Positions 1-7,643 of a stretch of 64,000 nucleotides of DNA are shown here, piece after piece. The translations under genes were made by a program, and so were the position numbers. Under the pieces are notes generated by a model. That model saw nothing but the letters and a program-made list of their open reading frames with translations, searched no databases and was not told where the DNA came from. The first letter of the stretch is position 1. Each line of letters starts with the position of its first letter. Location of the stretch: the IMG/VR virus record IMGVR_UViG_3300020154_000003, positions 248,001-312,000 of that record; one strand, given 5' to 3'.

Positions 1-64
1 TATTCAAATATACGCAAACCAGAGGAAAATGTTACAAAAAAGGCTACTTTTTTATCATCCTGAA

Positions 65-247
65 TTAAGGATGGAGGTAGTAAACAAGGGTGTTAAAGAC
101 AAGAAATGCAGCACCGAATGCTACTAGTATTGAAACCACTATTGAAATTTTTAACGCCCTTGCCCTTGCTTTATTTTTTGCGATCTCCTTCCTCACGTTT
201 CTTTTCAATAAATTGGTATAATAAGATGAACAGGATAAGAGTGACAT
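65..247 (-). CDS. small hypothetical membrane protein
   Basis: 60-aa ORF with basic stretch then hydrophobic C-terminal helix; TATTTATA motif 32 nt upstream. Confidence 0.5.
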   Translation of the reverse strand: MSLLSCSSYYTNLLKRNVRKEIAKNKARARALKISIVVSILVAFGAAFLVFNTLVYYLHP

Positions 248-289
248 AAAAGCTAATGAATAGGTTTATAAACATTCTTATAAATAGTA

Positions 290-1725
290 AAAGTTTTAGG
301 CAAGTGCATCGACCATTTGGGTTCGCAGCAATGGTCTTGCCTAAAACATAACTGAGAGTTTCTCAGTTTTTCTTTAAATAGTAACCCACGCCTTAATAGT
401 ATAGGTTCGGTTCTTACTCTGTTCGAGCACTGAGTTTTTCAGAACCTACGACTGTTTGTACATCTGCCAGTACGACCCACAGACAAATTACTGGCATCAT
501 GGTATTCCAATGGCTCTCACGTTCGCCAATCCTCTCTTCCCTCTCTTTTGCTTGGCCATCATGACGATGGTTTTCATTCTGACAAGGATCAAGGTCGCTA
601 CAATACTTACGGGTTTGTAGGGCATATTGCAAGCCCCTTGCAACACGACCGAGTTTTTTTAGAGATAGATAGAAATGCTTACTTATGTGTTCAAGTTCGG
701 CATCCCCGTGTGGCAGCTTTGCAATCCGTACTTCACGATGAATGAGACCGTGGAGCAAAGTTTTCTCTTTAAGTCGCTAACCATGCGACAGCCAGTCTTA
801 TTTTCAATGTCACGATCTAAAGGATGTTTAACAGTCGATCTTAATGGGTATTTCAAGGTTCCTGACTTCATCCACTACTACGAACCCTTTTTCGTAACCA
901 TGACATTCAAAAAAACAGCAACTACACAGAAGGTTTTTTAATGTTGTTTCACTCAATCAGCAGCTATACAACTGTGTAGTCCCTTACGTTATCCCCCTTA
1001 TCATCAGTGTGGCCACACGGATTTACGGTTGGTTCCCATATCAGTTTACCGTTCAAAAATCATTATGTTGTGATCAGCCATCGAGTACTTTTATCCACCA
1101 ACGCCACTCTATGTATTGGCGCACAACTTTGGCTGGCTATGGTCACCATCTTAAAATCACAACATTAAATAACATGTGGTCAGGGATTATGGCATCTCGC
1201 TTGCAGTGCCAAACTTGCGGATAATCCTCCCCTCCACAATGAGATAATAAATTGACGAATGATCGAGATTTATATAGCCGCGAAGTAGAACAACGCTCTC
1301 TTTCTGTGCTGCGCATTTATCGCCAATTTAAAATAAAAAATTAAGTCTCATCACTACAGTTGTAATGAGATTGTCGTAACTTCCTCTTACTTTCTTCAGA
1401 GCGAGATTTAATATGATCAGAGCGTACTCGCGAAGGAGCGACACATTTAAGCGTTCTAAGACCAGTACCGAAGTACCGACCCAATGAGTAATCACATTAC
1501 GAAACCAACTTTACCAACTTACTGTACGCATACACAGGTGTCATTACTCTGTTTACCAATGTGTGTCGGTGAGCCTCTGCAGCGAGACCCTTGGCTTAAT
1601 TTCTATTTTTTCAAAGAACAATGAGGTGCAGGAAGGTCGGTTATGCCTCCTTTTTCCAATACGTACATTTAAACGTTCATCCTGCAAACCTTGCAGTAAC
1701 CACACCTCCAACCCTATAGGAGTTG
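290..1725 (-). ncRNA. candidate large structured non-coding RNA (family unassigned; boundaries approximate)
   Basis: No ORF resembling neighbouring genes; visibly less AT-rich; many helices that favour the minus strand via G-U pairs (cUUCGg hairpin 1463-1478, 9-bp stem 1346-1370, 9-bp helix 921-929/972-980, hairpin 293-347); follows a tRNA-like element. Confidence 0.6.
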
Positions 1726-1729
1726 TTTG

Positions 1730-1819
1730 TAGGGGTGAGAGGATTCGAACCTCCACTCTTCGGGGCTTCAGTAATGCAACCACAGCCCCGATGTTTTATC
1801 CAGTTAAACTACCTCCCCT
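1730..1819 (-). tRNA. atypical tRNA-like element with extended anticodon arm; no encoded CCA; isotype not assignable
   Basis: Minus strand: D arm GTTT-AACTGGATA-AAAC, T arm GGAGG-TTCGAAT-CCTCT, imperfect acceptor AGGGGAG/CACCCCT, 8-bp stem TCGGGGCT/AGCCCCGA around a 16-nt loop. Confidence 0.75.
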
Positions 1820-1836
1820 GTAATCATATGCAATTA

Positions 1837-1859
1837 TACGGAGAATAATGTGAATTGTT
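1837..1859 (-). promoter_or_regulatory. ECF-type promoter motif AAC-N16-CGTA upstream of the tRNA-like element
   Basis: gtgAAC-16 nt-CGTAtaat on minus strand, 17 nt before the tRNA 5' end. Confidence 0.65.
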
Positions 1860-1863
1860 CACA

Positions 1864-2013
1864 CTATTCAATCTTTTTTCGACAAAATTCTTTATTCGCT
1901 TTTTTCTTTTTGTCAGGGACAACCATAGGTTTGGGCATGATATTAGTTTCACGACTAATTTTTTTAGCCATCTTAAGTCTGTCCAAATTCGTTATGGTTT
2001 TCTTCGTTTTCAA
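1864..2013 (-). CDS. small basic hypothetical protein (49 aa, TTG start; not in ORF track)
   Basis: Read manually: MKTKKTITNLDRLKMAKKISRETNIMPKPMVVPDKKKKANKEFCRKKIE; start overlaps upstream stop (TTGA). Confidence 0.55.
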   Translation of the reverse strand: MKTKKTITNLDRLKMAKKISRETNIMPKPMVVPDKKKKANKEFCRKKIE

Positions 2014-2240
2014 AATCCTATAAATCTATATACTGGAAGTACTGTAAATTGGGAATGTTGCCACCTCTCCGAATTCTCAGCATGAGCCAAAGCCTCTTCC
2101 ACCGTATCAAACTCCTGTTCTTCACGATAATCAGGGCCGTAATTATTCCCTGAAGGATCGGTTAAAGTTAATGTAAATGAACCATTTATTGAGGTTTCAA
2201 TCAGAAACACTAAACGATATTTTGTTACTAAACGCTTCAT
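2010..2240 (-). CDS. hypothetical protein
   Basis: 76-aa ORF in a tightly packed minus-strand run. Confidence 0.65.
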   Translation of the reverse strand: MKRLVTKYRLVFLIETSINGSFTLTLTDPSGNNYGPDYREEQEFDTVEEALAHAENSERWQHSQFTVLPVYRFIGF

Positions 2241-2245
2241 AACTA

Positions 2246-2467
2246 TTAATTAAGTATGACAAAAATCAATGCTTTCGGGTTATATACATTATAACACCAA
2301 TCAATTACTGGCTGTTTCGTTATCCAGTACATCTGTGTTGTTTTCAGATTCGCTTTGCGAAACTCCATGAGCAATTCAAGATCACCGAAGCCTGATTCAA
2401 ACAGGACTTCGTGTGATATTAAAGATGACTTCAAATCTTCGATATTAGCTGGTTCAATATGTTCCAT
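2246..2467 (-). CDS. hypothetical protein
   Basis: 73-aa ORF, co-oriented, short gaps. Confidence 0.65.
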   Translation of the reverse strand: MEHIEPANIEDLKSSLISHEVLFESGFGDLELLMEFRKANLKTTQMYWITKQPVIDWCYNVYNPKALIFVILN

Positions 2468-2476
2468 AACTTTATT

Positions 2477-3565
2477 TTATAAATCGTCATCACTATTATT
2501 AATAAATGGCTTACACCATTTTGGTCTCACAAGAGGCCAAATGTTTCTGCTAATGTCCTTCCCATCCATAAGACTGAACACCAGCTTGGAGTTAGTGCAA
2601 TTCTTAAACACATATTCTGCCATTTCCTTTCTTGAAGAAAAGTTTTGTAACATGACTTCACGGTGTTCCAACATAGCACGTTCGTGGACTTCATTGAATC
2701 GATCCGTAAGTTCTTGCACAGTCTTTTTGATGAACTGGTCAAATTCATCAGGTGTTCTATCCAATAATTCATCGAATGATTTTCCATCTCTCAAATGCTC
2801 CCATACAATCACATTCGAAACGTTAGTTACGATGCTATGCAAACGGCAGTATTCTTCGAACTTCATTTTCACTCTGAATCCGTTGATGAACTTAGCAATA
2901 TATCCTTCACGGTTGGAGTCCTGCACATCCCTTACTTTTTCAAGGTCAGTAAACCCATCGTATCTTTTAACAACTTCAAAACCGATCTCTTCCAAAGGCA
3001 AGTCATTTCCAGTGGTATTGTCAATTACTGCCAACAATACCAGATCATCCTTCCCAAAGTAATCGCAGACAATCCTGTTTTCAGGATAGATGATTTCGAA
3101 CAGATATGTCGCACCTTTGTTCAACTTCTCAAAAGTGTGCTGGTATCTTTCGTACAGAACCTTGTTTGCGTGTTTAGCCTGATCGCTCTCAAAGCTTCCT
3201 CTGGAAGCGATATAAGGCTTGCCATTCAACCAATACAAAATACCCAACGAACCGTCCATCTTTTCGTATAGTTCGAAAGGAAGTGCAGGAATCTGCTCTG
3301 GTGTGTGTTCCTCATAATTGAAAAACTTGATGAATGGTCTAGCGACAATATTCATCTCACCATCAAGGATTAGTCCCCGTGTAAGCAAAGTGATCTCGTT
3401 CCACAATCTTTCGAATTGGGCCTTACGGGTATAGTTGTAGATGTACAGGTCTGCGTTAGGGTGTTTTTGCACCATGACGTATTCCTGAGCCAACATTTCC
3501 TTAAGTAATTCCTTATTCATATTATATACAGCTAGAAACTCACCCGATTTTGCCATCGGGGTCAA
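2477..3565 (-). CDS. T4 Rnl1-like RNA ligase
   Basis: Motif I EKMDGSLG; N-terminal YNYT...RGLILD...ARPFIKFFNY; FEIIYPENRIV; EGYI and RVKMKFEEY motifs. Confidence 0.9.
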   Translation of the reverse strand: MTPMAKSGEFLAVYNMNKELLKEMLAQEYVMVQKHPNADLYIYNYTRKAQFERLWNEITLLTRGLILDGEMNIVARPFIKFFNYEEHTPEQIPALPFELYEKMDGSLGILYWLNGKPYIASRGSFESDQAKHANKVLYERYQHTFEKLNKGATYLFEIIYPENRIVCDYFGKDDLVLLAVIDNTTGNDLPLEEIGFEVVKRYDGFTDLEKVRDVQDSNREGYIAKFINGFRVKMKFEEYCRLHSIVTNVSNVIVWEHLRDGKSFDELLDRTPDEFDQFIKKTVQELTDRFNEVHERAMLEHREVMLQNFSSRKEMAEYVFKNCTNSKLVFSLMDGKDISRNIWPLVRPKWCKPFINNSDDDL

Positions 3566-4246: not shown

Positions 4247-5413
4247 TTATTGGTTCAGGATGGTATTCAAATCAACCAATCTGGATTCAAGTATCTTTTT
4301 GTAATCAAGCTGATTGGGTGCCGATCTCACTCCATTATTTTCTGCTTGTTGGATAGCATCCAGATCACGCTCAACCTGTTCCTTCTCATATGCTGAGTAG
4401 TCGGTTTCGAAGTATGGTTGTTCAAGCACGTCAAAATGAGTACCCTTTTCGTCCTTCGATACATTCAGGACAGCATACGGATAGTATTCAGCAGTCCTCA
4501 TTTTTGTTGACTCGCTGCTCGGAACGTGAATGACATGTGCTGGATTCACGAGTACCATCAATACGGTCTCACCTTGATTGTAGAACCATTTCACATATGG
4601 TGTTGAACCAACGTGTAAACCATTTGAACTACATTCAACCGTATGAGGTTCAAACTGGCGTTCCTTCCTAACTGCTTCTCCCAACATGATTCGGGTTGTG
4701 CCGTTATGCTTGTCGGTATAGACAACTTTATCGGTAGCAGCGTCAATTTTATCAAATAGATCAGATAGGTTACCAACAAATTTAACGTTCTCGTTCAGAT
4801 CAGGGATGACACTATCATCAAGAACGGAATTCATGACGATGTAGGTGTTCTTCGTAGTATCTCTCAATACTGAATAGTTCTTCGGAGATTTTTTGTTCAG
4901 CTTAACCCTCTTATACTTTTCCTGAACATATGCGACCAATTCCGCATCCATCGAGTTTTGGAGTGTTTTCACAACTTTGTAAGCAATGAAATATCCATTA
5001 TCAGTAATGGCGAACTGATATTGCTGCAGAAAATCAAATAACGTTTGGCGAATCTTCACATCTGGATTTAGCATGAGCAACTTCCAAAAATTGACCAGTG
5101 CTTCTGTGGGGAAGTTGTTGTCAATGTATTCCAAAAACGTGTTTACAAGTACTTCAGGAATCGGTTCATTGAAACCTTTCAGGAAGTATTGATCGTTTTC
5201 AGTTTCCAGAAAACCATGTACGACTGCTCGATACATGCGATTTAGACTAGTCAGAAGCGTATTCAATTCTCTTTCACCACCCCTCTTAGCTTCCAGCGCA
5301 AGTTTGAAGAATTCATCGGCCTGAGCCTTCTCTTCAAAGCTTTTTTGGTAAACATTACCATCAATCAAGAGATTGACTACTTTACCAATTTTATTTGCTA
5401 CGATTGTCGCCAT
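4247..5413 (-). CDS. rIIB: rIIB-like protein
   Basis: YFIAYKVV, CSSNGLHVG and VLVNPAHVIHVP...KMRTAEY motifs; directly downstream of rIIA-like gene. Confidence 0.8.
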   Translation of the reverse strand: MATIVANKIGKVVNLLIDGNVYQKSFEEKAQADEFFKLALEAKRGGERELNTLLTSLNRMYRAVVHGFLETENDQYFLKGFNEPIPEVLVNTFLEYIDNNFPTEALVNFWKLLMLNPDVKIRQTLFDFLQQYQFAITDNGYFIAYKVVKTLQNSMDAELVAYVQEKYKRVKLNKKSPKNYSVLRDTTKNTYIVMNSVLDDSVIPDLNENVKFVGNLSDLFDKIDAATDKVVYTDKHNGTTRIMLGEAVRKERQFEPHTVECSSNGLHVGSTPYVKWFYNQGETVLMVLVNPAHVIHVPSSESTKMRTAEYYPYAVLNVSKDEKGTHFDVLEQPYFETDYSAYEKEQVERDLDAIQQAENNGVRSAPNQLDYKKILESRLVDLNTILNQ

Positions 5414-5450
5414 TTTATTATTTTTATAAATTTGTTACAAAGTTACTGCT

Positions 5451-7643
5451 TTATTTTACGTAAACCAACTTAATAAGTTTCATCAATTCAGGGTTTTTTG
5501 TTGCGTCATCCCATTTACTATCAGGAATATTGATGTAGTCCAACATTGTGTTTTTCTCCATCTGCTGTTCCATGTAGGCTAACTCTTTCTCGAAACCTGC
5601 AGTCAATTTATTTTCATCGATTTGAAGCAGTGTAAAGTCAATCGGAAGGTGTTTCTGAGATAAGGATTTAACTTTATTATAGTGATTCTCAACACTTTTA
5701 CTGTACACTTTCAATTTCTTATCAACGGTGGTCAGTGCTTTGTTGAAGAAAAGAGAATTCAAATTCTCATACCTATCAACGAATTTCTTTGCTTGAAGAA
5801 TGGAGATCACCTTATCACGTTTCTTCATGATGAACTTCTTGATGAAGAGTGAATGATGAATTACGTTTTTGAAGTTCTTCACAAATCCCTCATTACCCTT
5901 AGCGATTGCAATGAATTTGATTTTTTTGTTAGAACCTAAAAGATAATCTCTGTAGTTGTTCTTCGTGCTCTTAGCTACGTCCAATTGTTCTGTCAGTTCG
6001 TAATAATTGCTAAGAGTGCGTTCATCATCTTTGAAACCATATACAATAGTCCCTTTGAAATCATGAAGCTGGCGCAGGATCACCCTTGTACGGTCATAAC
6101 CTCCTGCAATCGCATTTACGGGAATTTCGTGATCAAGAAGCACTTCATTCACCACATTCCTCTTCGGGATTTCAAAATATTCAGGTACAACGATGCTATC
6201 GTAGTGTTTCGTTTCTGCTTTGATTACGCCCATCACTTCATCCATAAGCATCATTGCTTCCTTTTCAATTTCAGGGCTGGATGGTAGAACCTTTCCATCA
6301 GATTTTGTGAGAAATACATCTTTCAAAATTTGATCGAACTTCTCATCGTAAGCATCTTTCACAGGTGAGATTGATACGTATACTCCTAACTCTGCTTTTA
6401 AATAAGCTTGTACACGTCTCTTTCTTTTAGTTCCAACAGGAGTGAAGATCAAATTATGCCATTTATGCATCGTTAGAAGTCCACCATCCCAAGTCTCTTT
6501 TCTGTAGCGTTTCTTACCAGTATTACCAATGGTGCGAATGTTAATGAGGGCATCAACAACAGAACTGGCACTCGGAATAAAAGGCAACGCTTTGTATTTC
6601 GGATATACCAACTCGCTACTTTTGGCAATAGTACCGATGAAAATAGATACGTCTTTCTTAGCATCGATAACAAGTCTACCGTATGCGTCTTTGCATTGGT
6701 AGTAATCTTTGATCGTAGAGATATTTTTATGCTGCGCCAACAGCATGTCCTTCAATTCTTGTTTTGCTGCTTCGATCTTCAGCTTGATCATTTTTTTTGT
6801 ATGATCATTATATTCAAGACTCTCACGGGAAGCACCAACGTTGAGTTCACCAATATCGAATCTCAAAGCCACAGGTATACTATGTTCCCTTTCATCAATA
6901 CCAATTGCATTGTAGTCTATAGGGTATGCCACACGTCCCAAACAGATGTGCATTTTGCTGGAATAGTCGTTTCCTCTGTAAAGGAAATTTTGGCCAGTAT
7001 AGATGACGTATTCGTTGATTACCGAGTTACTAAACCCTTCGAAAATCACATTTTCAAAGTAGTAAAGTTGACGGTTGATTTCTCTTTCAAAGTTGTAGAT
7101 GTCACTACCTTTGATCGGAACTTTGACAGTCGTTCCATTGCGTTCAATCGTATCCTCGGTCGAAAGAAGGTCAATGACAGGAGATTTTTGACCTTTGTAA
7201 ATACAGTAATAGTATTTTTTACCGTTGAAGTTGGTAACAATATAGAACGAATCTGTATACGCCAAAGGAGTTTTTCCACCAATACCGAAACCACCGATTT
7301 GGTTGTTATCACCTCTCTTTGTGGTTTTGAAATACTTCGCATAGATGGTAGCGATCCGTTCAGGGGACATACCAACTCCAACATCAATAAATTGAATGTA
7401 GTGTTGGCCATTTTCTTTTATCAGACGAATAACAACAGGCTCATTGATGTTAGCTTCTTTATGAGAATCGAAGCAATTGGATGTGATTTCACGAACGATT
7501 GAGCCGATGGGGTTTGAATAGATGTTTTTCGTAAACATCGCAAAGATCATTTCATCGGAATTTTCGTCAAATCCGAAGGCAATGGATTTTTCAGTGCCTA
7601 TCGATTCTACTGTTTCTTCTGAGAATGCGGTATTGAGTTTCAT
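5451..7643 (-). CDS. rIIA: rIIA-like protein (N-terminal GHKL ATPase)
   Basis: IYSNPIGSIVREITSNCFDSH, DVGVGMS, TKRGDNNQIGGFGIGGK, GELNVGASRESLEY. Confidence 0.85.
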   Translation of the reverse strand: MKLNTAFSEETVESIGTEKSIAFGFDENSDEMIFAMFTKNIYSNPIGSIVREITSNCFDSHKEANINEPVVIRLIKENGQHYIQFIDVGVGMSPERIATIYAKYFKTTKRGDNNQIGGFGIGGKTPLAYTDSFYIVTNFNGKKYYYCIYKGQKSPVIDLLSTEDTIERNGTTVKVPIKGSDIYNFEREINRQLYYFENVIFEGFSNSVINEYVIYTGQNFLYRGNDYSSKMHICLGRVAYPIDYNAIGIDEREHSIPVALRFDIGELNVGASRESLEYNDHTKKMIKLKIEAAKQELKDMLLAQHKNISTIKDYYQCKDAYGRLVIDAKKDVSIFIGTIAKSSELVYPKYKALPFIPSASSVVDALINIRTIGNTGKKRYRKETWDGGLLTMHKWHNLIFTPVGTKRKRRVQAYLKAELGVYVSISPVKDAYDEKFDQILKDVFLTKSDGKVLPSSPEIEKEAMMLMDEVMGVIKAETKHYDSIVVPEYFEIPKRNVVNEVLLDHEIPVNAIAGGYDRTRVILRQLHDFKGTIVYGFKDDERTLSNYYELTEQLDVAKSTKNNYRDYLLGSNKKIKFIAIAKGNEGFVKNFKNVIHHSLFIKKFIMKKRDKVISILQAKKFVDRYENLNSLFFNKALTTVDKKLKVYSKSVENHYNKVKSLSQKHLPIDFTLLQIDENKLTAGFEKELAYMEQQMEKNTMLDYINIPDSKWDDATKNPELMKLIKLVYVK
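5457..5479 (-). promoter_or_regulatory. ECF-type promoter motif AAC-N16-CGTA for rIIB, embedded in the rIIA 3' end
   Basis: aAAC-16 nt-CGTAaaat, 43 nt upstream of rIIB start. Confidence 0.5.

What the first reader, a model, noticed from the sequence alone, without database searches (positions are those of the whole stretch)
1730..1819. Aberrant tRNA with an 8-bp anticodon stem and a 16-nt loop
Seen: canonical D and T arms, but the anticodon arm is TCGGGGCT-GTGGTTGCATTACTGA-AGCCCCGA. The acceptor stem has an A-A mismatch and a 1-nt register shift, and no CCA is encoded. The loop starts CT-GTG-G like tRNA-His and can form an inner GTGGT/ATTAC stem. Inference, three options: a tRNA with a short insert near position 37/38 that is cut and rejoined (an Rnl1-type ligase gene ends about 660 nt upstream on the same strand); a decoy for host anticodon nucleases; or a processing signal for the downstream large RNA.
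Basis: partly seen in the sequence, partly recalled or inferred. Interest (0 to 1): 0.72.

Follow-up and report, generated by a model that had tools for sequence, protein, structure and literature searches.

The report
tRNA-shaped, non-decoding phage RNA element
A soil jumbo phage carries a tRNA-shaped RNA whose anticodon loop is replaced by a long hairpin; it belongs to a small family of such probably non-decoding tRNA look-alikes that sit in front of a large, abundantly expressed, unclassified phage non-coding RNA, and it is probably not an intron-bearing tRNA.

Summary
On the minus strand at 1730-1819 the Rfam tRNA model scores 44.3 bits (gathering score 29), with 22 nt where the 7-nt anticodon loop should be. 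The element is one of a family: orthologues in related soil jumbo-phage contigs (L108, L114, L116) and paralogues (L108, L113) keep the acceptor, D and T arms, with compensatory changes in 11 of 21 pairs. Their anticodon "loops" are hypervariable. In this syntenic slot loop lengths run from 4 to 51 nt, so the short ones cannot be introns. No bulge-helix-bulge motif, EndA-type endonuclease or RtcB was found. The nearby Rnl1-type ligase plus a Pnkp-like kinase is the ordinary phage tRNA-repair pair. The closest relatives (L104-L106) have deleted the element and its tail (about 203 nt), and the window's copy has an irregular acceptor stem. The element starts 5-8 nt after a conserved promoter-like site. 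It precedes about 1.37 kb of conserved non-coding sequence that shows covariation and that three independent soil RNA-seq studies cover. My best reading is a non-decoding tRNA-like module, probably a processing or stability handle, that is dispensable in this sub-lineage. Splicing is unlikely, and a decoy role cannot be excluded.

The parts
1730..1819 (-). tRNA-shaped element. Acceptor 5' strand 1819/1818-1812; D arm 1809-1793; anticodon arm 1791-1760; variable loop 1759-1755; T arm 1754-1738; acceptor 3' strand 1737-1731; discriminator A at 1730.
   Evidence: Rfam RF00005 at 44.3 bits, E = 3.7e-6. ARAGORN with -i. CM R1 at 83.8 bits.
1760..1791 (-). Extended anticodon arm: 8-bp stem (1791-1784 with 1767-1760) and a 16-nt loop. 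A possible inner hairpin lies at 1783-1771, leaving a 3-nt UGA bulge at 1770-1768.
   Evidence: Fold at -17.8 kcal/mol, z = -4.4, 0 of 200 shuffles as stable. GGGGCT/AGCCCC is shared with the orthologue L108:8240.
1621..1729 (-). A ~110-nt 'tail' that travels with the element. It is homologous to L108:8337-8457 and L114:7705-7812, with a long-range helix and a variable middle.
   Evidence: nhmmer E = 1.3e-12 to L108; alignment A4.
1621..1823 (-). Indel block (element plus tail, ~203 nt). It is absent from the closest relatives L104, L105 and L106, where 'AA' joins the flanks.
   Evidence: Alignment and blastn/mafft junctions. No tRNA hit in L104-L106.
1833..1861 (-). Promoter-like site TGAACA-17-TATAAT (10/12). 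The -10 region is conserved in L104-L106. The predicted transcription start is ~5-8 nt before the element.
   Evidence: conservation. The transcription start is inferred, not shown.
1864..1971 (-). Conserved 35-aa basic ORF just upstream of the promoter-like site.
   Evidence: Substitutions against L104 fall in one codon position [1,13,2]. Coordinates. Conserved in all relatives.
2010..2467 (-). Two small protein genes (76 aa at 2010..2240; 73 aa at 2246..2467) with no known family.
   Evidence: Third-position substitution bias [7,5,18] and [14,9,31]. No Pfam hit. Homologue P0002 is 87% identical.
2477..3565 (-). Rnl1-type (T4 RnlA family) RNA ligase.
   Evidence: PF09511, E = 1.1e-16. 5345 homologues at E <= 1e-60, some named 'T4 RnlA family RNA ligase'.
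1346..1620 (-). Conserved non-coding leader ending in a terminator-like hairpin plus T-run (1370->1346).
   Evidence: 70-92% identical to L104, no codon periodicity [20,16,21], frameshifting indels. Terminator scan.
906..1247 (-). Large non-coding RNA, module 1. Homologous to L104, L108:10204-10585 and L107:10043-10188.
   Evidence: nhmmer. 11 of 42 predicted pairs compensatory. Covered by RNA-seq contigs.
212..812 (-). Large non-coding RNA, module 2. Homologous to L104, L114:8779-9356 and L116:4850-5409. Terminator-like hairpins lie at 368->350 and 347->293.
   Evidence: nhmmer E = 1.6e-40 and 2.5e-33. 21 of 84 pairs compensatory, a long-range closing helix, and G.U pairs on the minus strand. 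RNA-seq contigs from 3 studies cover 394-1240. Hairpins.

Best explanation
The element is a tRNA-derived, tRNA-shaped RNA that no longer decodes.

Its acceptor/T-arm stack, D arm and the elbow-forming GG and TTCGAAT loops are kept. Its anticodon loop has been replaced by a freely evolving hairpin. It is one member of a family of such elements found in a clade of soil jumbo phages (host probably Bacteroidota, by inference). They sit in a fixed genomic slot downstream of an Rnl1-ligase gene cluster and upstream of a large, structured, highly expressed non-coding RNA, mixed with ordinary tRNA(CUA) and tRNA-Tyr genes.

Most likely mechanism (inferred, not shown): the element is transcribed from the promoter-like site just upstream, as the first module of a non-coding transcript. 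It is recognised by the tRNA-end-processing machinery (RNase P at its 5' end; RNase Z or exonucleases and the CCA-adding enzyme at its 3' end), which reads only the 12-bp acceptor/T stack and the elbow. It would therefore act as a cleavage or stability handle ('punctuation') for the neighbouring RNA, not as an adaptor in translation.

In the window's sub-lineage the role is dispensable. The sister phages have deleted the element, and the window's copy has an irregular acceptor stem.
For: Shown:
- tRNA-model match with all arms except the loop.
- Orthologues L108:8240, L114:7616 and L116:4526, and paralogues L108:8779 and L113:8557, keep the cloverleaf. 11 of 21 pairs have compensatory changes.
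- Window vs L108:8240 shows compensatory swaps in the T and D stems.
- The loop region is 16-31 nt in these six elements, is unalignable between them, and has no common fold (z from -0.7 to -6.1).
- Other elements in the same slot have loops of 4, ~4, 9, 40 and 51 nt next to normal 7-nt tRNAs.
- The phage also has a 59-nt tRNA-like element with no anticodon arm, at genome 190148-190206.
- The phage already has normal tRNA-Phe(GAA), tRNA-His(GTG) and tRNA-Ser(UGA) genes, so no decoding gap needs filling.
- A promoter-like site (10/12) ends 14 nt before the element and is conserved.
- About 1.37 kb downstream is conserved, non-coding (no codon periodicity, frameshifting indels) and structured. 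RNA-seq contigs from three independent soil studies cover it, while the flanking genes are not covered.
- In L107 an insert-bearing element ends ~5 nt before the conserved core of that RNA.
- Insert-bearing elements were found only in this clade and slot, apart from one candidate (L065:12258), among 72 sources totalling 1.28 Mb.

Established knowledge:
- RNase P measures the acceptor/T stack and the elbow, not the anticodon arm (PMC4919913).
- GOLLD and ROOL RNAs of phages lie near tRNA islands, and some GOLLD RNAs carry linked tRNAs (10.1101/2024.12.08.627333).
Against: - No RNA-level evidence exists for the element itself. The RNA runs gave no contig over 1671-1837, although small RNAs and relatives that lack the element would give that result anyway.
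- The abundantly sequenced part starts near 1240, about 480 nt downstream of the element. A terminator-like hairpin (1370->1346) lies between them, so the element may belong to a separate short transcript.
- The closest relatives make the large RNA locus without any tRNA-like element, so it is not required for that RNA.
- The window's acceptor stem is imperfect, and its retained pairing is only marginally better than chance (p ~ 0.05-0.06).
- Ordinary tRNAs would serve equally well as processing signals, so the reason for keeping non-decoding copies is unexplained.
Confidence: 0.5

Rival explanations
1. Decaying pseudogene. The element is a dead tRNA copy, the last remnant of a tRNA array that once occupied this slot, with an insertion in its anticodon loop and no present function.
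For: - The closest relatives (L104-L106) have deleted it together with its tail.
- The window's acceptor stem has mismatches or a 1-nt register slip, whereas the L108, L114 and L113 copies pair fully.
- Pairing kept after 5 of 8 changes on the 3' strand has p ~ 0.06 by chance, so selection is not demonstrated.
- More distant relatives carry 3-5 tRNA or tRNA-like genes in this slot, against one here and none in L104.
- No RNA-seq contig covers it.
Against: - The cloverleaf is kept across diverged phages (ligase only ~67% identical), with compensatory changes in the D, anticodon and T stems, while the surrounding spacers are not alignable.
- The GGGGCT/AGCCCC stem is identical in the window and L108.
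- The arm is far more stable than shuffles (z = -4.4).
- The T loop and the D-loop GG are intact.
- The element sits directly after a conserved promoter-like site.
Confidence: 0.22
2. Decoy or sponge. The tRNA-shaped body, with a non-cleavable rod in place of the anticodon loop, binds and titrates a host factor that recognises tRNA bodies, such as a tRNA-targeting defence nuclease or toxin, or another tRNA-binding protein.
For: - The body is conserved and the anticodon loop is free to vary.
- The elements are linked to tRNA(CUA) and tRNA-Tyr genes with unusual loops (G at position 33) and to an RNA-repair ligase. That is the kind of neighbourhood associated with conflicts over tRNA cleavage (PMC7824862).
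- Irregular tRNA polycistrons in soil metatranscriptomes are associated with toxin-antitoxin loci, and some are charged but not used in translation (PMC5389517).
Against: - Known anticodon nucleases read the anticodon loop, which is not conserved here.
- No candidate partner was identified.
- The sister lineage lost the element.
- There is no expression evidence for the element.
Confidence: 0.15
3. Intron-bearing tRNA. The insert, lying 5' of U33 of a Phe-like U-GAA-NN half-loop, is cut out by an unidentified endonuclease and the halves are healed and sealed by the phage Pnkp-like kinase and Rnl1 ligase, giving a decoding tRNA.
For: - Four of six family members end the loop with T-GAA-NN directly before the 3' strand of the anticodon stem (window, L114, L116, L108:8779).
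- ARAGORN proposes Phe(GAA) with an intron at 33/34 for three of them.
- An Rnl1-type ligase lies 658 nt upstream, and a Pnkp-like kinase is in the genome.
- Introns are expected to be hypervariable.
Against: - There is no BHB or BHL motif and no conserved structure at the putative junctions.
- The junction would not be at 37/38.
- L113:8557 and L108:8240 do not give a consistent 7-nt remainder.
- For the window, the GAA reading needs a 15-nt excision, while ARAGORN prefers UGA on a 6-bp stem.
- Sister elements have 4-nt loops, which cannot be introns.
- No EndA or RtcB was found.
- Normal tRNA-Phe, tRNA-His and tRNA-Ser genes are already present.
- The ligase is conserved where the element is absent.
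- The acceptor stem is flawed.
Confidence: 0.07

Closest known systems
[quoted passage not shown] 2017, PMC5389517)
   Same: - tRNA-model hits with non-canonical geometry, including 8/4 acceptor/T arrangements.
- Found in clusters, in soil metagenomes and metatranscriptomes, and in phage tRNA arrays.
- Some are charged but not used in translation, and a regulatory non-coding role was proposed.
   Different: - Allo-tRNAs have long variable arms and 7-nt anticodon loops. This element has a 5-nt variable loop, and the abnormality is a 16-31-nt replacement of the anticodon loop.
- The 8/4 reading of the window's copy is only one of three near-equal registers.
tRNAs flanking or embedded in the large ornate phage RNAs GOLLD and ROOL (Weinberg 2009/2017; Kretsch et al., 10.1101/2024.12.08.627333)
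   Same: Phage-encoded, large (>0.5 kb), structured, highly expressed non-coding RNA next to tRNA genes, with tRNA units on the same strand just upstream.
   Different: - The large RNA here matches neither Rfam model nor any other family at E <= 5 in the window, or E <= 1 in eight relatives.
- The adjacent tRNA units in GOLLD are described as ordinary tRNAs, not anticodon-loop-replaced ones.
tRNA-like processing modules such as MALAT1 mascRNA, and mitochondrial tRNA punctuation
   Same: A cloverleaf-like unit attached to a long non-coding transcript and cut out by RNase P and RNase Z. Its anticodon region is not constrained for decoding.
   Different: These are eukaryotic and organellar precedents. 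No cleavage is shown here, and the element lies at the 5' end, not the 3' end, about 480 nt from the abundant RNA.
Archaeal and eukaryal intron-containing tRNAs (BHB motif, EndA, RtcB or Trl1-type ligase)
   Same: Extra nucleotides in the anticodon loop of an otherwise tRNA-like gene, with an Rnl1-type ligase and a polynucleotide kinase encoded by the same genome.
   Different: - No BHB motif and a non-canonical position.
- No splicing endonuclease.
- No conserved mature loop across orthologues.
- Sister elements have loops shorter than 7 nt.
Bacterial Y-RNA-like YrlA tRNA mimics (Chen et al. 2014, PMC4201824)
   Same: Non-decoding RNAs with tRNA-like T and D arms and acceptor, found near RNA-repair ligases and also in phages.
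   Different: - The topology is reversed. In YrlA the RNA ends lie at the anticodon side and the acceptor is closed, whereas here the acceptor holds the ends.
- No YrlA match was found in the window; there were only sub-threshold hits in relatives.
- A Ro60/Rsr gene was not looked for.

Membership tests
Canonical tRNA (Rfam RF00005) | Score above the family's gathering threshold | tested here: met
   44.3 bits against 29, E = 3.7e-6 in 64 kb.
Canonical tRNA (Rfam RF00005) | D arm with GG, and T arm with a TTCRANY loop (elbow) | tested here: met
   GTTT/AAAC stem with loop AACTGGATA; GGAGG/CCTCT stem with loop TTCGAAT.
Canonical tRNA (Rfam RF00005) | 5-bp anticodon stem closed by a 7-nt loop with U33 and an anticodon | tested here: not met
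   22 nt lie between the 5-bp stem strands, forming an 8-bp stem plus a 16-nt loop.
Canonical tRNA (Rfam RF00005) | Fully paired 7-bp acceptor stem with a 2-nt linker to the D stem | tested here: not met
   Two non-canonical pairs in the canonical register, or an A.A mismatch with a 3-nt linker, or an 8/4 register with an A.A mismatch.
Canonical tRNA (Rfam RF00005) | Aminoacylation and use in translation | not testable with these tools
   Needs charging and decoding assays.
BHB-intron tRNA (archaeal/eukaryal type) | Bulge-helix-bulge motif (two 3-nt bulges around a 4-bp helix), or a relaxed bulge-helix-loop motif conserved at the exon-intron junctions | tested here: not met
   The window has one 3-nt bulge, a 5-bp helix and a 3-nt loop. 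L108:8240 has 1-nt bulges. The L114 and L116 inserts are unstructured. No motif is shared.
BHB-intron tRNA (archaeal/eukaryal type) | Splicing endonuclease (EndA, PF01974) available | tested here: not met
   No match in the 366-kb phage genome; the controls ring in 4 archaea. The host genome is unknown.
BHB-intron tRNA (archaeal/eukaryal type) | Orthologues share the mature 7-nt loop while the intron varies | tested here: inconclusive
   Four of six end with T-GAA-NN. L113:8557 and L108:8240 do not fit, and the 5' side is inconsistent.
BHB-intron tRNA (archaeal/eukaryal type) | Spliced product exists | not tested
   The single read-laying run showed no RNA contig over the element. Read-level data were not available.
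Group I intron in a tRNA anticodon loop (bacterial type) | Insert of about 200 nt or more with a P1-P9 core | tested here: not met
   The insert is 13-15 nt, and no intron family matched at E <= 5.
(8/4) tRNAs and allo-tRNAs (Mukai 2017) | 8-bp acceptor plus 4-bp T stem | tested here: inconclusive
   The 8/4 register pairs 7 of 8 plus 4 of 4 positions, with a normal 2-nt linker, at -27.4 kcal/mol. The 7/5 registers give -28.2 and -26.3 kcal/mol.
(8/4) tRNAs and allo-tRNAs (Mukai 2017) | Long variable arm (allo-tRNA, Ser-type) | tested here: not met
   The variable loop is 5 nt, AGAGT.
T4 Rnl1 (RnlA) family RNA ligase (the neighbouring gene) | RNA_lig_T4_1 domain with the KxDG adenylation motif | tested here: met
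   PF09511, E = 1.1e-16. KMDGS is readable in the translated frame. Homologues are named 'T4 RnlA family'.
GOLLD / ROOL large ornate RNAs (the downstream RNA) | Match to the Rfam covariance models | tested here: not met
   No hit at E <= 5 in window 1-2600, or at E <= 1 in L104-L116.
GOLLD / ROOL large ornate RNAs (the downstream RNA) | Large, conserved, non-coding, structured, phage-encoded, next to tRNAs, and expressed | tested here: met
   This is a resemblance in kind only, not membership.

The most novel reading that the evidence does not exclude
The insert-bearing elements are real, decoding phage tRNAs (for example tRNA-Phe(GAA)) carrying short protein-spliced introns 5' of U33. An unrecognised endonuclease removes the introns, and the phage Pnkp-like kinase and Rnl1 ligase reseal the halves. 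That would be a protein-dependent tRNA-splicing pathway in a bacterial virus.
Probability: 0.06. Interest if true: 0.9.

Novelty: new variant of a known kind. Interest (0 to 1): 0.5.

Why it matters
If the reading is right, a clade of soil jumbo phages maintains tRNA-shaped RNAs that are selected for their body and not for decoding, physically linked to a large unclassified non-coding RNA that was the only part of this 5-kb stretch recovered in RNA-seq contigs from three independent soil studies. This would matter in three ways:

- It would extend the known link between phage tRNA islands and large ornate RNAs (GOLLD, ROOL) to a new RNA class.
- It would give a concrete, testable case of tRNA-like punctuation, or possibly decoy function, in phages.
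- It warns that tRNA finders run with intron options will mis-annotate such elements. ARAGORN called this one 'tRNA-Ser' and its orthologues 'tRNA-Phe' or 'tRNA-Leu' with introns.

The downstream RNA is probably the more valuable lead for follow-up.

Tried and rejected
- **Exact-stem pattern search** (TCGGGGCT-N16-AGCCCCGA) in IMG/VR gave 20 loci, all chance hairpins and none tRNA-like.
- **Eighty ligase loci from IMG/VR** (up to 56% identity): no similarity to the element or the non-coding region by blastn or nhmmer. The ligase there follows normal tRNA arrays.
- **Two exact 25-26-mers from the large RNA** in IMG/VR gave nothing.
- **Phage GenBank megablast**: no match.
- **Alternative genetic code**: two tRNA(CUA) genes exist, but standard-code ORFs cover most of the genome and reading TAG as sense adds little, so no other code was used.
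- **Single-sequence folding energy of the large RNA** does not discriminate between strands (z = -1.4 and -1.6). The strand was assigned from covariation and G.U pairs instead.
- **ARAGORN's 'tRNA-Ser(tga) + 13-nt intron'** is rejected: no long variable arm, a 6-bp stem, and a non-canonical junction.
- **tRNA-His reading** (loop starts CT-GTG-G): it is shared only with L108:8240, is absent in L114 and L116, and a normal tRNA-His already exists.
- **Recent insertion of a mobile element** is rejected, because orthologues of the element plus tail occupy the same slot in L108, L114 and L116. Loss in the L104 lineage is the more parsimonious reading.
- **Two contig look-ups** returned no DNA.
Full report
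**1. What is there**

The window is positions 248001-312000 of a 366,038-bp soil jumbo-phage record.

- On the minus strand at 1818/1819 to 1730, the Rfam tRNA model scores 44.3 bits (gathering score 29; E = 3.7e-6 for the whole window). It matches model positions 1-71 but has 22 nt in place of the 7-nt anticodon loop.
- Default ARAGORN finds nothing. With introns allowed it reports 'tRNA-Ser(tga), 13-nt intron'.
- The D arm (GTTT/AAAC, loop with GG) and the T arm (GGAGG/CCTCT, loop TTCGAAT) are canonical.
- The acceptor stem is irregular. There are two non-canonical pairs in the canonical register. The shifted register has an A.A mismatch with a 3-nt linker. An 8/4 acceptor/T-stem reading has one A.A mismatch and a normal linker. 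The three are energetically close.
- No CCA is encoded.

**2. Genomic setting**

All of the following features lie on the minus strand, listed from upstream to downstream.

- An Rnl1-type RNA ligase (2477..3565; PF09511, E = 1.1e-16).
- Two small ORFs of 73 and 76 aa.
- A conserved 35-aa basic ORF (1971..1864).
- A promoter-like site, TGAACA-17-TATAAT, at 1861->1833 (10/12). Its -10 region is conserved in relatives.
- The element, which starts about 14 nt after the -10 hexamer.
- Downstream, about 1.37 kb (1620->250) with no convincing ORF.

Comparison with the relative L104 separates coding from non-coding sequence:

- The flanking ORFs show third-position substitution bias ([14,9,31], [7,5,18], [6,3,19]).
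- The 1.37-kb stretch shows none ([20,16,21], [19,19,21], [15,19,22]).
- It has indels of 1, 2, 5 and 8 nt, yet it is 81-99% identical.

Two modules of this stretch have homologues in further relatives and show covariation on the minus strand:

- Module 2 (812->212): 21 of 84 pairs compensatory, with a long-range closing helix and many G.U pairs.
- Module 1 (1247->906): 11 of 42 pairs compensatory.

RNA-seq contigs from three independent soil studies cover only 394-1240 of the 5 kb laid, with depth 60-77 in run X27, which holds a diverged relative. The DNA-like run X2 covers the whole 5 kb.

No Rfam family, GOLLD and ROOL included, matches at E <= 5 in the window or at E <= 1 in eight relatives. 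The 'downstream large RNA' is therefore real, structured, expressed and unclassified.

**3. Relatives: loss in the nearest, a family in the next nearest**

- *Searches that found no close relatives.* IMG/VR and GenBank phages hold none.
- *How relatives were reached.* I reached syntenic contigs through the protein collection.
- *Nearest relatives.* L104, L105 and L106 have a 76-aa ORF that is 87% identical and a ligase that is 74% identical. They match the window up to 1824 and again from 1620. The ~203 nt between (the element plus a ~110-nt tail) is replaced by 'AA', and no tRNA is detectable in them.
- *Next circle of relatives.* In L107, L108, L109, L113, L114 and L116 the ligase is 66-68% identical. 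The same slot there holds an array: a tRNA(CUA), one or two tRNA-Tyr genes, and several tRNA-model hits with abnormal anticodon regions.
- *Orthologues of the element.* nhmmer aligns the window's element plus tail to L108:8236-8454 (E = 1.3e-12), L114:7613-7789 and L116:4468-4626.
- *Direction of the event.* The element is therefore ancestral to the group and was lost by deletion in the L104 lineage. It is not a recent insertion.

**4. Anatomy of the family**

Six insert-bearing members were compared: the window's element, L108:8240, L114:7616, L116:4526, L108:8779 and L113:8557.

- They give a consensus cloverleaf in which 11 of 21 pairs show compensatory changes. The window's copy supplies most of the broken acceptor pairs.
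- Window vs L108:8240: the 5' acceptor strand and the GGGGCT/AGCCCC stem are identical, and the T and D stems have compensatory swaps.
- L108:8779 vs L113:8557: the acceptor and D arm are identical, and the anticodon and T stems are rebuilt with different pairs.
- The region between the anticodon-stem strands is 21-31 nt (22 nt in the window). It is not alignable between members and has no common fold. Only the window and L108:8240 form a stable rod (z = -4.4 and -6.1). L114 and L116 are essentially unstructured (z = -0.7).
- Other elements in the slot have loops of 4 nt (L107:8942), about 4 nt (L114:7838), 9, 40 and 51 nt.
- A covariance model built from the six members finds insert-bearing hits only in this clade and slot among 1.28 Mb of related phage loci. 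The one exception is a candidate at L065:12258.
- The phage also encodes, elsewhere in its genome, a 59-nt tRNA-like element with no anticodon arm and an encoded ACCA end.

Selection evidently acts on the tRNA body and not on a decoding loop.

**5. The splicing hypothesis**

Points in favour:

- Four of the six loops end with T-GAA-NN immediately before the 3' stem strand, like the 3' part of a tRNA-Phe(GAA) loop.
- An Rnl1-type ligase and a Pnkp-like kinase (genome 105908-106285) are encoded.

Points against:

- There is no BHB or BHL motif and no conserved junction structure.
- The junction would lie 5' of position 33.
- Two members do not give a consistent remainder.
- Sister elements have loops shorter than 7 nt.
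- No EndA-type endonuclease and no RtcB were found.
- The phage already has normal tRNA-Phe, tRNA-His and tRNA-Ser(UGA) genes.
- The ligase is conserved in relatives without the element and in many phages with only normal tRNAs.

Rnl1 plus Pnkp is the classical phage tRNA-repair pair (established knowledge; see also PMC7824862). I put splicing at about 7%.

**6. Most likely mechanism**

I infer, but have not shown, that the element is a non-decoding tRNA-like module transcribed as the first unit of a non-coding transcript. The tRNA-end-processing enzymes would recognise it, because they read the acceptor/T stack and the elbow (PMC4919913). It would then serve as a cleavage or stability handle.

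Points supporting this reading:

- The element's position right after the promoter-like site.
- The tRNA and tRNA-like arrays that precede the large RNA in relatives.
- The L107 element, which ends ~5 nt before the RNA's conserved core.
- The precedent of GOLLD and ROOL, which lie near tRNA islands, and of GOLLD RNAs with linked tRNAs (10.1101/2024.12.08.627333).

Points weakening it:

- About 480 nt and a terminator-like hairpin (1370->1346) lie between the element and the abundantly sequenced part.
- No RNA evidence exists for the element itself.
- The L104 lineage has lost it.
- The window's acceptor stem keeps pairing that is only marginally better than chance (p ~ 0.05-0.06).

A plain pseudogene (about 22%) and a decoy for tRNA-body-binding factors (about 15%) therefore remain live alternatives.

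**7. Comparison with known systems**

- The closest descriptions are the irregular and 8/4 tRNAs and the 'polycistrons of irregular tRNAs' from soil bacteria and phages (PMC5389517).
- The tRNA-associated ornate phage RNAs GOLLD and ROOL are also close.
- So are tRNA-like processing modules of the mascRNA type.

The element fails the defining tests for each of the following:

- A canonical tRNA: the loop and the acceptor.
- A BHB-intron tRNA: the motif and the endonuclease.
- A group I intron tRNA: the size.
- An allo-tRNA: the variable arm.

The downstream RNA fails the GOLLD and ROOL models. I therefore class the finding as a new variant of a known kind (a non-decoding tRNA-like element in a phage tRNA/ncRNA locus), not as a categorically new system.

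**8. Verdict**

- The intron idea is unlikely. The processing-module idea is the best supported, but it is unproven and evidently dispensable in this sub-lineage.
- Interest is moderate (0.5).
- The unclassified, abundantly expressed ~1.4-kb RNA next to the element is the more promising lead.

Noticed in passing
window 212-1620 (minus strand): About 1.37 kb of conserved non-coding sequence. Two modules show covariation (906-1247 and 212-812). RNA-seq contigs from three independent soil studies cover 394-1240, up to 77x depth in one run. No Rfam family matches. This is probably a new large phage non-coding RNA.
   Followed up: partly
window 806-994 (RNA run X27): One RNA-seq contig (279 nt, depth 77) begins and ends with the same 30 nt (806-835), a 249-nt cycle in the assembly graph. 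This could be a tandem repeat in a relative or a circular or permuted RNA form. It is unresolved.
   Followed up: no
window 1611-1700 (run X2): A DNA-like contig joins 1611 to 1700. It skips 88 nt of the tail but keeps the tRNA-like element. This third haplotype suggests the leader region is an indel hotspot.
   Followed up: no
genome G000:C1:190148-190206 (minus strand; outside the window): A 59-nt tRNA-model hit (45.4 bits) with acceptor, D and T arms, no anticodon arm (an 8-nt linker in its place) and an encoded ACCA 3' end.
   Followed up: partly
genome G000:C1:89-126 kb (outside the window): There are 54 tRNA genes. They include two tRNA(CUA), although the standard code fits the genome. 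They also include class-I tRNAs with long variable arms (Met 89 nt, Lys 89, Thr 85, Asn 90) and two tRNAs with 6-nt anticodon loops.
   Followed up: partly
window 1864-1971 (minus strand): A conserved 35-aa lysine-rich ORF (MAKKISRETN...). Its substitutions against L104 fall in one codon position, and it is conserved by nhmmer in all syntenic relatives. It has no known family.
   Followed up: partly
L107:9688, L108:9991, L113:8811, L109:9506: The tRNA-Tyr(GTA) genes in the relatives' slot have the anticodon loop TGGTAAA or TGGTAAG, with G instead of the near-universal U at position 33.
   Followed up: no
L113:7047-7667: A 206-aa HisRS-like gene (PF13393, PF00587) lies directly downstream of the RNA ligase in one relative.
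   Followed up: no
window 4247-7643 (minus strand): A 730-aa HATPase_c protein and a 388-aa protein whose homologues give a faint rIIB hit look like an rIIA/rIIB-like pair. They are conserved upstream of the ligase cluster in all relatives.
   Followed up: no
window 528-542 vs 1731-1745: A 15-nt stretch within RNA module 2 is 87% complementary to the 3' part of the tRNA-like element (T-stem 3' strand plus acceptor 3' strand). This may be chance.
   Followed up: no
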